Below, piece after piece: positions 52,920-58,135 of a stretch of DNA of 64,000 nucleotides (positions within the stretch are counted from its first letter, which is position 1; every line of letters begins with the position of its first letter). Source of the DNA: Kudoa neothunni (taxonomy: Eukaryota > Animalia > Cnidaria); NCBI GenBank assembly GCA_964304625.1, contig OZ199838.1:8267550-8331549 (forward strand), written 5' to 3'. The notes under the pieces were generated by a model. The model had not been told where the DNA came from and made no database searches. It was given only the letters and a program-made list of their open reading frames with translations. A program made the translations under genes and the position numbers.

Positions 52920-54304
52920 TATATGAAAAAAACCAACAAAAAATGTTTTATTTAATGTATGATAATGTAATACGAACATAAACTTCTCTAAATGGTTAGA
53001 ACCAATACTTAACCCTTAAAAATTTTAATTATAACATCACAAAATTCTAATAATAATCGTGTATTATAATACTATTTTATCTACTAACATTTCACAAAAG
53101 GTAGTTTTGGACAATTACACACGTCATTTTATTGATGAAATACAAGAAATCTAAAACTTTAGTAAGTTAAAGCGATTACTTATAAATAAATTTTGTTTGG
53201 AATTTGTTAATACTTTTATTCAAATTCATATAATCTAAAAGATAATGGAACACTTTCTTAATTGATTAATATCTTAACATAATTATTTTCCGTTTGGATG
53301 TCTCAAATTACAACTTTCGGCTTTATATGAGACCAGTATTCTAAGACGTTACACCAACTTTGATGTAGTCGAACAATTGTATGTTTAATAATTGAATTTA
53401 TAAAAAGTTTTCGTGGAACAAAAGATTAATTCCCTTATGGCCTGTATCCCGATAACTAACTTCCTTATACATTATTATAATACTGGTATGTTTTTATCTA
53501 TTTGGGAATGAATGAAACGACGATTTTTATTTCCCGAAAGTATGAACTAAAAAAGTTTATTAATTAAATCTGATGCTTAAGATTTTCTGCGCATGAATTA
53601 TTCTTATTTTAACGGAAAATCGATGTATAAATGTTACATTACCTGAATTTTTTATTAAATTTAATTGTATACAAAAATAAAAGTCCTAACAAGGATAATG
53701 TATTATTTCTACAACGAAATTAATTTTGTATATTCTCTTTGAATTGTAATAAAATACTTTCAAATAGATACAAATGTTATGAACTGACTGGACTAGTATT
53801 TAAATGTATATTTTTGTAATAACCTTTTATTTGCACCGGAGGCGGTTACATCCACTGGCATATAAGATAAAATGAATTAAAAGCGCTTCGATCTCTTAAC
53901 AGTAACAAAACCTTTGAATTATATTTGAATTAGTATAGGAATTTCTATAATTTTCGAAATCCCTAGTGAATATTTACGCCTCAATTAAGTACATAATTGC
54001 GTTATACATTGATAAAATAATTTCTTCATTCAAATCTGTTCCTTATTTATTACTTAGACTTTCAATTAATTGTGCTGAGCGCGTGAATTTAAAACTGTAA
54101 ACATATTTAGACGCGGTTCATGTTATCGCGTTTTCTATCGATAAACTATTTCGTTGGTTAACTGACTTAGCCGCTATCCCTAGTGTAATGTTCAAGTCTC
54201 AGTTTACTTAAAACATTTCCGGTTCTCTGTTGTAGCTAGGAAACATAATAATCACAAACGCAATAAGAGACCTCTTAGAAAGGTTACGCTATCAAAAACT
54301 TAAA

Positions 54305-56566
54305 ATGAGAGTTAGTGTGAGAGCGATCGTCTTCACTGTTCTTGTCATAATATTTCAAATTATATTTTTTGTGCTTTACATTACATTGACTGACTATGGT
54401 CCTTGTGGTTTCCCTGAATGGATCACAAATGTTAGCTATACATTAAATTCCAGCCTATTCACATCAATATCCGGCTCCTCTGATATCACTGATACTACCA
54501 CTGATACCACATCGGTGGCATCCATCACCGTTACGTCTAGTGGTATAAACCCAGATTATTTTAAACCCATAAAAATATTTTTATAGACAGCCTGTCAACT
54601 ACAGCTACGGACACGTCTGTCACTACTACAGATACAGGTACAGCCACAACCACGGATACAGGTACGGTCACAACCACGGATACAGGTACAGCTACAACCA
54701 CGGATACAGGTACGATCACAACCACGGATACAGGTACAGCGACGACCACGGATACAGGCACAGCGACGGCTACAACCACACCTGCACCCTTAAAAGGTGA
54801 TGTTATATTGAATTAAAATAATCTATATCCATTAATTTAGCCAACAAGATTAGAAATAATGAATTTGAAATAAAATATGCTAGACACTATCCATCACCAA
54901 GATATTTCTTGCCTCCTGGTAGTTATATTCCTCCAATATCAACCGACCCAACTAAGGGACCATTTTATTGTAATTAGTCTAGTAGTTTTTGGTTTTAATT
55001 ACTAGTTTATAATAGCCACTCTACCAATAAGTGTAATGATATTTGCGGGCCTGGGCTTACTGTTCAGTGCAATCAGATGTAACAGCTTTACAGGATTGGG
55101 TTTGACATTCTTCCTTGCCTGTTTTGCTTTCGAGTGGGCAGCACTTGTTGTGCCTTGGTTACTGCAAGCCGCTATAGGCACTTTTAAACCCGAAGAGATA
55201 TACTACAACATCACCACGTAAGCCAACTAATTTGTCTGTGACAATGATTAACTTATCTAGCATACTCGATATACTATATGCAGTGTTCTCGATGATCGTT
55301 GCGTTTGGTGCATTAGCTGGACGAGCTAGCCGAGTTCAATTATTGGTGGTGGTCATATTTGGCGTTGTGCTGTATGCCGTCACTAGGATGGTTATTGTTC
55401 ATTATTTAGTTGTACTTGATCTTGCCGGATCAATGTCGGTATTCACTTTTGGAGCATTCTATGGAGTTTCCATTTCATGGGTGATCAACGCATTCTACAA
55501 ATCAGACTCCTCAATAAGTAATAACAATCGCAGGAATTATCTCTATACTGGATACGTGGAAAACCTACTTTCACTTCTCGGTAAGTATTTATGCAGTATC
55601 AATTTACACAATTTTTTATCAAGGTTCTATTCTCATATTTGTTCATTGGCCGTATTACTGTGCATATTTAATTCCTGTCACAATGGATATGTATATCAGA
55701 GCAATAGTCAATACCTATTTCTCTATGGTGTCTTGTGTGGTGATGGTGTATGCTCTTAGTTCTGTGATGACAAAGAGTAAACGAATTGACATAGTAAATA
55801 GTTTTCCATTATTCTCTACTGTGATTTTTAACAGGGCCATATTCAAAAAGCTACTCTTGGAGGTGGTGTCGCAGTGGCATCTGTGGCACCTCTGTACTTA
55901 CACATATGGGGTGCAGTATTACTCGGAGTCCTCACTGGATTGTTTTCGATTATTTTCTTAAACTACATTCAAGTAGCACATTCTAATTATAATAAAATAT
56001 TAAGAAAAATTTATTTTCAGAGACACACCCATAAAAGATATGTCTATGATAGTTATTCTGTGATGTCAGCTTTCGGTATCCCTGGAATAATTGGAGGAAT
56101 TGCAAGTGCAGTTATGGCGGCTCTTGCAGTATCACCGCTTGACTACACTTTGAACGAGTGATCAAACATTAGTTTTTAATGTTAACCTAAAGTCTTTATT
56201 TAGATTGTTCATCTTATACCCTGCTATTACCGGTCCAAACGGAGTTGGTGCTCCTAGAAGTGACACAGTACAAGGAGCCTACCAATTTGCAGGCTTACTC
56301 GTGGCAATTGGAATTGGATTAGTTGGTGGATTATTAGTTGGTATAAGTAATATTTATGCCCATTCTTTAACTATTAATGTAGGCATCATTGTGAGGTATT
56401 TGGGGCCACTTGAAGAAGATGAAGCTTACACTGATGACACAATGTTTACTTTTGTAAGTTCTAACTATCAGACACTCATAACTTTCTTTAGCCATACGAG
56501 ACCGGAAATCCATGTTGTCCGCCTGCAACAAAGTGTGAAAAAGCTTGCAAAAATGCCAAAGATTAG
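54305..56566 (+). CDS. Rh-family (Amt/Mep/Rh) membrane protein lacking the twin His, with a Thr-rich extracellular insert
   Basis: Spliced ORF without internal stops: VMIFAGLGLL, VAFGALAGR, DLAGSMSVFTFGAFYG, HWP, RAIVNTY, HIQKATLGGGVAV, FGIPGIIGG, QGAYQ. All introns are GT-AG. Stop TAG at 56564-56566. Confidence 0.9.
54622..54765 (+). repeat. Coding tandem repeat, 6 x 24 nt, TTTDTGT(A/V/I)
   Basis: Unit ACAACCACGGATACAGGTAC(A/G)NNN within Rh exon 2. Confidence 0.95.
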
Positions 56567-57239
56567 TGTCCATGCACAAACTGCCTATATTATTGAACTA
56601 ATACGATTATTTCATCTCACTAGGATGTTTATTCTATTTCCAATTTTTCAATTTATTGGGTTAACAAAAAAGTATCCAACAAACAAAAACTTTGATTGTC
56701 TTCATTTGTCAATACTAAAAGAATTTTAAAAGTTCAATTTTTTGGACGATTTAAATGTACGCAAGCATCAGATGATCATATAATTATTTAAGCGGCGTTT
56801 TTACGTATAGCAAGACGCCTGGCACAGCTTATTAGGTCCTGGCAAATCTGGCCCATTCCATTTATGCTGCGGATACCGCAGCTATTAGGACGTAACTCAG
56901 GGAGAAAAAACTCCCACGCTCGATAACCAATTTTGTGGCCTGCAATGAACCTTAATTAAATTTCAGTTCACGTCAAATCCTCACATAGATAAAATAATAT
57001 CTGATTATTAACCTTCCAAAAGTTCAAATAAGTATTGAATACTGATTTTTTCATCCAAAACCGAAGTATATTAGTTAGCATTAATAGGCAATTTTTTTCT
57101 ATTTATTTAATAGCGCTAGCTAAGTAAAGAGAAGTTTATATGTAAAGTAGAAAACATGATTATTATGTTAAACTAATCACAGTTGATATCTATAAGAGAA
57201 AAACATTGTCCAAAGAATGTTTCCACATGTAAATATTCT

Positions 57240-58135
57240 TTCAGATTATATTCATTCACTGTGTTTGAAGCGTTTCTCATTCAATTCAATAAATTTATCC
57301 CACCTTGAATTGGAAAATTTCTTCGGTTATTTACTCTTATTTGATCAAACACCTCTTCACAGGGTTTTTTTGGGAAGTACCTCGGTAAAAAATGAATTTC
57401 TAAGTGGAAACTGTCATCAAACTCCCAAATATGGTGGTGAAAACGAACATTATCCATTACAATAATGTAGTTTTGGTCATCTCCAATGATATCTGTTAAG
57501 TTTGACAAAAAAATTTGAACGAATTTTCATCAACTCTACCAAGGACCACTTCACAGCTAATAACATTAATTGCGCTCACCGCGAGAGTCATCGTTACATT
57601 CAATCCTTTACTGTTTGAAATTACAGCGTTTAAAATCCCCCTCACAAAGGCCGACCATGGTTCCTCATCATGTAAAGAGAAAATGGGCTCTCTTCCACAA
57701 AAAGTATATTCCAGTATCTTACGTCGACAAGAATTCCAGTATACCACACAGCGCAAAACTTTCTCTCCTGCTTTACAATGGGGATATTTCTAATAACAGA
57801 GATTGGCCTCACAACCTATTAAGTGTTCTTTAAATTTGTTAACCACCAACAACATATCGAACGGAATAACTGTAATCCCTATTTTTTTAATTACACCCTG
57901 AGTTGTTATAGTGTAATTGTCTTTCAGTAATTTTATTAGGTTATCCTTCGGTCCTTGGGTTAAAATAATGTTTCTTATCCCTTCTCTAATGGCCTTTTTG
58001 GATGAATTAGCAAGCCTATATTTTTTAACCAAATCACTTAGTATCGACTTTGGAAATCTCTTCCGGACTCTTTCCCTTGTCAGAAATAAGACGACAAGCG
58101 AAAGCTCTCTTGTCTTCAGAATGATGCGTTTTTTT
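57240..58135 (-). mobile_element. IS630/Tc1-like transposase relic
   Basis: Fragments KGLNVTMTLAVS, IIVMDNVRFHH and FLPRYFPKKPCEEVF in different frames. TIRs not identified. Confidence 0.7.

What the first reader, a model, noticed from the sequence alone, without database searches (positions are those of the whole stretch)
55260..56100. Rh protein that has lost the ammonia-pore signature: twin His to Phe/Phe, Phe gate to Tyr/Tyr
Seen: the gene is intact, but DAGGSMTIHTFGAYFG reads DLAGSMSVFTFGAFYG (TTC at 55442-55444) and DTCGINNLHGIPGIIGG reads DSYSVMSAFGIPGIIGG (TTC at 56072-56074). The gate motifs ADF and WPSFN read ILY and WPYYC. FQDVHVMIF reads TLPISVMIF, and the AVNE Glu is Arg. Established: the twin His (RhCG H185/H344) and the Phe gate (F130/F235) are the conserved conducting elements of Amt/Mep/Rh. 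Vertebrate RhD/RhCE replaced the His pair with aromatic residues and are regarded as non-transporting structural proteins. Inference: this is an independently evolved Rh30-like paralogue in an invertebrate, probably parasitic, lineage. It could be a scaffold, sensor or adhesion protein, or a channel for a different substrate.
Basis: partly seen in the sequence, partly recalled or inferred. Interest (0 to 1): 0.85.

Follow-up and report, generated by a model that had tools for sequence, protein, structure and literature searches.

The report
Myxozoan Rh protein without pore histidines
The only Rh/ammonium-channel gene found in this small parasitic-cnidarian (myxozoan) genome is intact and under strong selection, yet it has replaced both pore histidines and other conducting residues, as all its myxozoan relatives have, so it is probably not a normal ammonia channel and resembles the human RhD/RhCE blood-group proteins.

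Summary
Window 54305-56566 (+) holds an intact 11-exon, GT-AG, 608-aa Rh gene. Alignments to human RhCG show H185->Phe (TTC 55442-4), H344->Phe (TTC 56072-4), F130->Tyr, F235->Tyr, E166->Arg and loss of the NN shunt pair. D177, D336 and the structural glycines are kept.

- It is not a paralogue. No other Amt/Mep/Rh gene was found in the 40.26-Mb genome, which fits the published Kudoa neothunni assembly.
- The change is not private to this species. All seven myxozoan orthologues examined lack both histidines: Henneguya, Myxobolus, Thelohanellus, Ceratonova, two unnamed ones and this one.
- Eight of its ten introns match coral and fish Rh genes in position and phase, so it is a true metazoan Rh gene.

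Against a 70%-identical intact orthologue, dN is 0.20 while synonymous sites are saturated. That indicates strong purifying selection, and the new residues (Tyr130, Arg166, Phe344) are fixed across the clade. The Ceratonova orthologue was detected by a few peptides in isolated polar capsules.

My best reading is a repurposed Rh that cannot conduct ammonium by the canonical route, analogous to Rh30. Its actual function is untested. No RNA-seq check was possible.

The parts
54305..56566 (+). Whole Rh gene: 11 exons, 10 GT-AG introns of 38-48 bp, 608 codons plus TAG stop
   Evidence: Model built and translated without stops. Exons 5, 7 and 8 hit PF00909. Exons 5-8 align to RhCG/RhAG.
54305..54542 (+). 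Exon 1: start codon, TM1 (aa 8-26), start of extracellular loop 1 with sequons NVS (54428) and NSS (54446)
   Evidence: The N-terminus is conserved with the L005 orthologue.
54587..54796 (+). Exon 2: Thr-rich mucin-like insert (TTTDTGTA-type units). The 24-bp tandem repeat x5.6 lies at 54631-54764.
   Evidence: TRF. Loop 1 (aa 29-195) is 32% Thr. The repeat is absent from the L005, Henneguya, coral and fish proteins.
54841..54969 (+). Exon 3: rest of loop 1
55016..55217 (+). Exon 4: TM2-TM3. TLPISVMIF stands in place of the canonical FQDVHVMIF.
55261..55580 (+). Exon 5: TM4-TM6 with Tyr266 (55277-9, = F130), Arg302 (55385-7, = E166), Asp313 (= D177, kept) and Phe321 (55442-4, = H185)
   Evidence: Alignment to 3hd6 at E 7e-14; codon coordinates
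55624..55793 (+). Exon 6: TM7-TM8 with WPYYC. Tyr378 (55656-8) = F235; Cys379 = N236.
   Evidence: Alignment to RhAG/RhCG
55835..55972 (+). Exon 7: TM9-TM10, the best-conserved part (GHIQKATLGGGVA)
   Evidence: PF00909 at 23.3 bits; RhAG E 3.9e-5
56021..56157 (+). Exon 8: TM11 with Asp479 (= D336, kept), Met484/Ser485 (= shunt N341/N342) and Phe487 (56072-4, = H344)
   Evidence: Alignment to RhAG/RhCG
56204..56453 (+). Exons 9 (56204-56340) and 10 (56383-56453): last extracellular loop, TM12 and start of the cytoplasmic tail
56492..56566 (+). Exon 11: Cys-rich cytoplasmic tail (CC-x5-C-x3-C) and stop. A Cys-rich tail is present in five of the six aligned myxozoan orthologues and absent from coral and fish Rh.

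Best explanation
This is the single Amt/Mep/Rh-family gene found in a myxozoan genome that fits Kudoa neothunni. It descends from the ordinary metazoan Rh gene and keeps the 12-helix Rh scaffold and the structural Asp and Gly residues. In an ancestor of the myxosporeans the conducting chemistry was rebuilt: twin His became Phe/Phe (Tyr/Phe in the Myxobolus group), outer gate Phe130 became Tyr, buried Glu166 became Arg, and the cytosolic shunt Asn pair was lost. These replacement residues have stayed fixed under strong purifying selection. Without the histidines the protein cannot deprotonate NH4+ and relay the proton as RhCG and AmtB do, so it is not a canonical ammonium channel. Most likely (inferred) it acts as a trimeric membrane glycoprotein with a structural or anchoring role, made mainly in spore-forming stages. 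It has a fast-evolving, heavily glycosylated outer loop and a Cys-rich, possibly palmitoylated, cytoplasmic tail. That would make it a functional analogue of vertebrate Rh30 (RhD/RhCE), but one working without any canonical Rh partner.
For: Shown here. (1) The spliced frame is intact. (2) Residue replacements are confirmed against RhCG/RhAG/RhCE. (3) It is the sole family member in the genome. (4) An intact 560-aa orthologue lies on L005 at 70% identity and also has Phe/Phe. Core dN is 0.20 with pS 0.76 (saturated); over all 533 aligned codons omega is 0.07. (5) All four Myxobolus-group orthologues and the Ceratonova shasta protein lack both His. (6) Of 84 columns near-invariant in 23 canonical cnidarian and bilaterian Rh, 27 are kept in all six aligned myxozoans (Gly, Pro, D177, D336, S181). 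Another 26 are changed in all six; F130Y, E166R and H344F each go to one and the same new residue in all six. (7) Eight introns share position and phase with coral and fish Rh genes. (8) The AlphaFold model of the Henneguya orthologue (pLDDT 84.8) superposes on RhCG with TM 0.88 and on RhCE with TM 0.83. From the literature. [quoted passage not shown] The C. shasta orthologue gave 2 and 3 peptides in two of three isolated polar-capsule preparations (PMC5566210 Table S1). The T. bryosalmonae Rh transcript rises together with sporogony markers (PMC8056827).
Against: No functional or localisation data exist for this protein. The polar-capsule detection rests on 2-3 peptides and could be membrane carry-over. 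Single twin-His substitutions in AmtB and Mep2 still pass ammonia, and Ala variants become channel-like (PMC10433425), so missing His does not by itself prove an impermeable pore. The RhCE authors themselves leave an auxiliary transport role open. The strong conservation of the whole transmembrane core, including D177, D336 and S181, is more than a simple scaffold would seem to need.
Confidence: 0.5

Rival explanations
1. It is still a channel, but for neutral gas (NH3 and/or CO2) moving through a purely hydrophobic pore, with no NH4+ recruitment or deprotonation step.
For: The whole pore-forming core is under strong constraint, and D177, D336, S181 and W232 are kept. Canonical cnidarian Rhp1 conducts both NH3 and CO2 (PMC8916725). 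RhCE has cavities reaching almost across the membrane. The parasite has no other Rh or Amt for ammonia disposal.
Against: Two Phe side chains plus Tyr/Tyr at the gate make the path narrower and remove the water and His wire. The cytosolic shunt Asn pair is gone. Very small organisms can lose NH3 and CO2 by plain diffusion.
Confidence: 0.25
2. It is a sensor or receptor that uses the Rh fold to detect a ligand or ammonium and signals through its cytoplasmic tail, like the occluded sensor Amts.
For: Non-transporting Amt sensors and receptors exist and were among the structural matches: 6eu6 'Sensor Amt Protein' and 8qj3/8qj4 'Receptor Sd-Amt1'. KsAmt5 has an occluded pore (PMC10433425). The myxozoan tail is a conserved lineage-specific Cys-rich module.
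Against: The tail is about 45 residues with no recognisable signalling domain and no Pfam hit. The external recruitment and gate residues are themselves altered.
Confidence: 0.08
3. It remains a working ammonium transporter that uses other residues in place of the histidines.
For: Some twin-His variants of AmtB and Mep2 still support growth on ammonium. It is the only family member in the genome.
Against: Both His, both gate Phe, E166 and the shunt pair are all replaced together. No alternative His is conserved across the myxozoan orthologues.
Confidence: 0.08
4. Origin rival: the gene was captured from a fish host, as an Rh30-type gene, rather than inherited from the cnidarian ancestor.
For: Myxozoans live inside fish. 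Arg at E166 and Tyr at H185 are shared with human RhCE. The AU test does not reject a clade of myxozoan Rh with fish RhBG (p 0.195).
Against: The exons score far better against RhCG and RhAG than against RhCE: exon 5 gives 55 and 35.5 versus 22.4 bits, and exons 6 and 8 give no RhCE hit at all. The phase-0 intron present in fish RhBG is absent in coral and in all three myxozoan genes mapped. A clade with Cnidaria is equally unrejected (p 0.239). No fish Rh30 sequence could be brought into the tree.
Confidence: 0.05
5. It is a decaying pseudogene or an annotation artefact.
For: The canonical functional residues are lost. No RNA evidence could be obtained for this species.
Against: The frame is open across 11 exons with perfect GT-AG borders. 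Orthologues are intact in at least five other genomes or transcriptomes. dN is 0.20 against saturated synonymous sites. Peptides of the C. shasta orthologue were detected.
Confidence: 0.02

Closest known systems
Vertebrate Rh30 polypeptides (RhD/RhCE)
   Same: Both have the Rh fold with the twin His replaced by aromatic residues. RhCE has Arg at the RhCG E166 position and Tyr at the H185 position, as the myxozoan proteins have Arg and Phe or Tyr. The RhCE pore is blocked by a short hydrophobic constriction and the protein is thought to be mainly structural. From general knowledge, Rh30 is palmitoylated on cytoplasmic Cys; the myxozoan proteins carry Cys clusters on the cytoplasmic side.
   Different: Rh30 is a vertebrate paralogue that assembles with two RhAG subunits. 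Here no canonical partner was found in the genome. Rh30 is not N-glycosylated (PMC8916725), whereas this protein has sequons and a mucin-like loop. Orthology is not shown: similarity to RhCE is lower than to RhCG/RhAG, and the fish-type extra intron is missing.
Canonical cnidarian and invertebrate Rhp1 (e.g. coral ayRhp1) and vertebrate RhAG/RhBG/RhCG
   Same: Shared features are the 12-TM architecture, a glycosylated first outer loop, D177 and D336, the Gly-rich helices, and eight shared intron positions and phases.
   Different: Rhp1 keeps the Phe gate, twin His and shunt and conducts NH3 and CO2. This protein has Tyr/Tyr, Phe/Phe, Arg166 and no Asn pair, and keeps only 44 of 84 near-invariant positions. 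It lies on a very long branch, with a stem of 1.3 changes per site.
Sensor or receptor Amts with occluded pores (Ks-Amt5, Sd-Amt1)
   Same: The Amt/Rh fold is retained while transport is lost or reduced, and the fold is reused for another purpose.
   Different: Those proteins keep the twin His and are fused to signalling domains. This protein lacks the His and has only a short Cys-rich tail.
[quoted passage not shown]
   Same: These are direct orthologues. They form one clade with 100/100 support and share Tyr130, Arg166 and Phe344.
   Different: The databases name them as ammonium transporters. No paper found in the searched library remarks that the conducting residues are missing. The window's protein adds a species-specific Thr-rich repeat and Tyr at F235.

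Membership tests
Amt/Mep/Rh superfamily (Pfam PF00909) | Significant match to the family profile | tested here: met
   The genome-wide six-frame search gives 34 bits, over the 23.2-bit cut-off, at this locus. Exon 7 alone gives 23.3 bits. The orthologues carry PF00909.
Amt/Mep/Rh superfamily (Pfam PF00909) | Helical bundle fold of 11-12 transmembrane helices | tested here: met
   There are 12 hydrophobic segments. The AF2 model of the Henneguya orthologue superposes on RhCG at TM 0.88. The window's own joined protein was not folded.
Amt/Mep/Rh superfamily (Pfam PF00909) | Twin-His motif in the pore (RhCG H185/H344) | tested here: not met
   Both positions are Phe, at codons 55442-4 and 56072-4.
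Amt/Mep/Rh superfamily (Pfam PF00909) | Phe gate (RhCG F130/F235) | tested here: not met
   Both are Tyr in the window. The other five aligned myxozoans have Tyr at F130. At F235, four keep Phe and Thelohanellus has Ile.
Amt/Mep/Rh superfamily (Pfam PF00909) | Conserved aspartates (RhCG D177/D336) | tested here: met
   Asp313 and Asp479 are kept, and both are invariant in all six aligned myxozoans.
Metazoan Rh gene (Rh50/Rhp1 type) by descent | Shared exon-intron structure | tested here: met
   Introns 3-10 lie at the same alignment columns and phases (1,2,1,0,0,2,1,0) as the eight introns of a coral Rh gene and eight of the nine in fish RhBG.
Metazoan Rh gene (Rh50/Rhp1 type) by descent | Phylogenetic placement inside Cnidaria or Metazoa Rh | tested here: inconclusive
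   The free tree puts the long myxozoan branch outside the cnidarian plus bilaterian clade. The AU test does not reject a clade with Cnidaria (p 0.239).
Functional Rh50-type NH3/NH4+ channel | Complete conducting set: gate, twin His, E166, cytosolic shunt N341/N342 | tested here: not met
   All are replaced: Tyr, Tyr, Phe, Phe, Arg, Met/Ser. The residue list is taken from PMC8916725.
Functional Rh50-type NH3/NH4+ channel | Measured ammonia, methylammonium or CO2 flux | not testable with these tools
   This needs yeast, oocyte or liposome assays.
Vertebrate Rh30 (RhD/RhCE) | Orthology to the vertebrate Rh30 clade | tested here: inconclusive
   No Rh30 sequence was available as a tool reference for the tree. 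Similarity to RhCE is lower than to RhCG/RhAG, and the fish-type extra intron is absent. Against that, a clade with fish RhBG is not rejected (p 0.195).
Vertebrate Rh30 (RhD/RhCE) | Heterotrimer with a canonical RhAG-type partner | tested here: not met
   No second Rh or Amt gene was found in the genome.

The most novel reading that the evidence does not exclude
Myxozoa as a clade turned their only Rh protein into a histidine-less membrane component of the polar capsule (the nematocyst homologue) or of the capsule-forming cell. There it would serve capsule biogenesis, anchoring or discharge rather than nitrogen excretion, which would be a new cellular role for the Amt/Mep/Rh fold and an independent natural replicate of the RhD/RhCE transition.
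Probability: 0.15. Interest if true: 0.8.

Novelty: new variant of a known kind. Interest (0 to 1): 0.6.

Why it matters
What RhD and RhCE do, and why a channel fold would be kept after losing its conducting residues, is a long-standing open question. So far it has been studied in one lineage only, where the answer is confounded by the RhAG partner. Myxozoa offer a second, apparently independent case with three advantages: the histidine-less Rh is the only family member found, it is old, and it is under strong constraint with the same Arg166 / aromatic-185 / Phe-344 solution. That makes the question testable by expressing a homotrimer in yeast or oocytes, solving its structure and localising it in spores. 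It also means the database name 'ammonium transporter Rh type C' for myxozoan proteins is probably misleading. Finally, these fish parasites may have no dedicated ammonium channel at all.

Tried and rejected

(2) I could not find a full-length predicted protein for this genome to use as a reference. The library searches returned only relatives. The joined spliced protein was therefore never sent to a search or fold tool. Exons were searched one by one by reference. The joined model was built only inside scripts from window.fa, for local alignment, dN/dS, intron mapping and the tree. The AlphaFold model is of the Henneguya orthologue, not of the window's protein.

(3) The tree did not resolve the origin. 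The myxozoan stem is too long, and both 'with Cnidaria' and 'with fish RhBG' pass the AU test.

(4) Vertebrate Rh30 sequences could not be put in the tree, because PDB chains are not available as references. The residue of RhCE at the H344 position was not seen in any tool output here.

(5) The T. bryosalmonae supplementary files hold no Rh entry, so the malacosporean state stays unknown.

(6) Two gene look-ups, for Nematostella and Exaiptasia, found nothing on record. A coral gene (Desmophyllum) was used instead.

(7) The pseudogene reading was rejected on the selection data.
Full report
**What is in the sequence**

Reading window 54000-57500 and splicing by hand gives an 11-exon gene on the + strand, 54305-56566. 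All ten introns are GT-AG and 38-48 bp long. The joined frame is open for 608 codons and ends at TAG 56564-56566.

Taken one at a time, exons 5, 7 and 8 match Pfam PF00909. Exons 5-8 align to human RhCG (3hd6) and RhAG (7uzq_L), and exons 5 and 7 also align more weakly to RhCE (7uzq_K).

- Phe321 (TTC 55442-4) lies opposite RhCG H185.
- Phe487 (TTC 56072-4) lies opposite H344.
- Tyr266 lies opposite F130 and Tyr378 opposite F235.
- Arg302 lies opposite E166.
- Met484/Ser485 lie opposite the shunt pair N341/N342.
- D177, D336 and S181 are kept.

Hydropathy gives twelve transmembrane segments. It also shows a 167-residue first outer loop that is 32% Thr, carries two N-glycosylation sequons, and contains a 24-bp tandem repeat of 5.6 copies at 54631-54764.

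**How unusual it is**

A HMMER search of 1.8 billion representative proteins with exon 5 gave 477 hits. Among the 65 full-length ones, 56 have His at the first pore site and 55 at the second.

The exceptions are four myxozoan proteins and a handful of unnamed environmental eukaryotic sequences: P0008/P0151 F/F, P0149 W/F, P0075 F/I and P0111 F/Y.

**Whose genome, and is there a normal copy?**

The assembly has 40.26 Mb in 4 sequences and a window GC near 31%. The closest named relatives of the protein are from Henneguya salminicola, Myxobolus squamalis and Thelohanellus kitauei, all Myxozoa.

The figures match the published Kudoa neothunni assembly: 40.2 Mb, three chromosomes plus a circular mitochondrial genome, GC 30.4% and an intron length of 49 bp (PMC12239612). 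I take that identification as likely but not proven.

Three searches of the whole genome hit only this locus: Pfam PF00909, a canonical jellyfish Rh (P0007) and a profile of myxozoan Rh proteins. These searches see genes exon by exon and can miss very short or very diverged pieces. Within that limit, this is the sole Amt/Mep/Rh gene and not a paralogue beside a canonical one.

**The change is clade-wide and old**

- A 4.9-kb contig from a public run (L005) carries an intact 8-exon, 560-aa orthologue at 70% identity. It has Phe/Phe, Tyr130 and Arg166, but no Thr repeat.
- Henneguya, Myxobolus and an unnamed transcript have Tyr/Phe; Thelohanellus has Phe/Phe.
- The Ceratonova shasta protein printed in Table S1 of PMC5566210 reads SVTR, ISVFLFG and ALSAF at the three sites, which is Arg, Phe and Phe.
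- In a careful ML tree the window and L005 are sisters (100/99) and join the four Myxobolus-group proteins (100/100) on a stem of 1.3 changes per site.

**Selection**

Against L005, the core (411 codons) has dN 0.20 while the synonymous difference is 0.76, which is saturated. Over all 533 aligned codons omega is about 0.07. The two species differ greatly in GC3 (36% against 9%), so dS is rough, but the direction is not in doubt.

Of 84 columns that are near-invariant in 23 canonical cnidarian and bilaterian Rh proteins, the window keeps 44.
- 27 are kept in all six aligned myxozoans. These are mostly Gly and Pro plus D177, D336 and S181.
- 26 are changed in all six. They include F130Y, E166R and H344F, each to one and the same new residue, H185 to Phe or Tyr, and the columns of RhCG N342 and L343.

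That is the pattern of a shifted constraint, not of decay.

**Descent**

I mapped introns of the Henneguya gene (L006), a fish RhBG gene (L007) and a coral Rh gene (L008) onto one alignment.

- Window introns 3-10 fall on the same columns with the same phases (1,2,1,0,0,2,1,0) as the coral gene's eight introns and eight of the fish gene's nine.
- The extra phase-0 intron of the fish gene is absent in coral and in all three myxozoan genes.
- Window introns 1 and 2 lie inside the lineage-specific loop insert.

So this is a genuine metazoan Rh gene.

The tree cannot say more. The myxozoan clade sits outside the cnidarian plus bilaterian clade, probably because of its long branch. AU tests reject neither a clade with Cnidaria (p 0.239) nor one with fish RhBG (p 0.195).

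Capture of a fish Rh30 gene is therefore not formally excluded. Two things argue against it: the intron pattern, and the exon scores, which are much higher against RhCG/RhAG than against RhCE.

**Fold**

The window's joined protein has no reference, so I did not send it to any search or fold tool. Exons were searched singly. The joined model existed only in scripts, for alignment, dN/dS, intron mapping and trees.

As a stand-in I folded the Henneguya orthologue with a 57-row alignment, giving pLDDT 84.8 and pTM 0.88. Its best structural matches, with TM-scores normalised to the target, are RhCG (0.88), RhAG (0.87) and RhCE (0.83), followed by bacterial Rh50 and AmtB. The scaffold is intact. 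The tools give no coordinates, so pore radius could not be measured.

**What it probably does**

Established knowledge:
- In RhCG the Phe gate, twin His, D177/D336 and the cytosolic shunt are the conducting elements, and a coral Rhp1 that keeps them conducts NH3 and CO2 (PMC8916725).
- Twin-His variants of AmtB and Mep2 are not all dead (PMC10433425).

In the alignment RhCE shows Arg at the E166 position and Tyr at the H185 position. That is the same solution as in the Myxobolus group, so the parallel with Rh30 is real at the residue level.

For myxozoans there are two pieces of published expression evidence, both weak:
- The C. shasta orthologue gave 2 and 3 peptides in two of three purified polar-capsule samples.
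- The T. bryosalmonae Rh transcript rose together with minicollagens and was read as a sign of sporogonic stages.

Putting this together, I favour a repurposed, non-canonical Rh. It would be a stable trimeric membrane glycoprotein with a variable mucin-like outer loop and a conserved Cys-rich cytoplasmic tail, acting structurally in spore-forming stages (confidence about 0.5). A hydrophobic gas channel is the main rival (0.25). A sensor role, residual ammonium transport, host-derived origin and pseudogene status are less likely.

**Novelty**

The genes are annotated in databases as 'ammonium transporter Rh type C'. Full-text searches for myxozoa with ammonium transporter, and for Rh30/Rh50 with histidine and invertebrate, found no paper noting the loss of the conducting residues.

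The finding is a new variant of a known kind: a second, apparently independent Rh30-like transition, and here in the only family member found in the genome.

**Limits**

- No Rh30, Polypodium or malacosporean sequences were available.
- The species identification is by assembly statistics only.

I confirmed it and found it to be species-specific.

Noticed in passing
window 54631-54764 (exon 2): A 24-bp tandem repeat of 5.6 copies encodes TTTDTGTA-type units in the first outer loop. It is absent from the 70%-identical orthologue on L005, which has an Asn/Lys-rich stretch there instead, so the loop evolves fast and by repeat expansion.
   Followed up: partly
window 56492-56566 (exon 11); L005 4551-4625: A short Cys-rich cytoplasmic tail is present in five of the six aligned myxozoan orthologues (not in the Myxobolus squamalis prediction) and absent from coral and fish Rh. 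Examples are CC-x5-C-x3-C here and CCCxC...C in the Myxobolus group. It may be palmitoylated or bind metal; this is untested.
   Followed up: partly
window 57281-57508 (- strand): An ORF fragment gives a weak DDE_3 transposase match (E 2e-4, below the cut-off). It lies among other short broken ORFs at 57.2-58.5 kb and is probably a decayed Tc1/mariner-like element just downstream of the Rh gene.
   Followed up: partly
proteins P0008/P0151, P0149, P0075, P0111; locus L009 1213-2394: Other Rh-family proteins from unnamed environmental eukaryotes also lack the twin His (F/F, W/F, F/I, F/Y). P0008 and P0149, together with the His-His protein P0022, group weakly (82/52) with the myxozoan clade, possibly by long-branch attraction. 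Loss of the histidines has therefore happened several times.
   Followed up: partly
L005 2712-4625; L006 1820-3449: Intron turnover among myxozoan orthologues. L005 lacks window introns 1, 2 and 5. Henneguya lacks intron 9 and its introns are only 26-31 bp. The L005 coding sequence has GC3 of 9% against 36% in the window.
   Followed up: yes
whole genome G000: The assembly size (40.26 Mb), number of sequences (4), GC and intron length fit the Kudoa neothunni genome assembled from yellowfin tuna reads (PMC12239612).
   Followed up: partly
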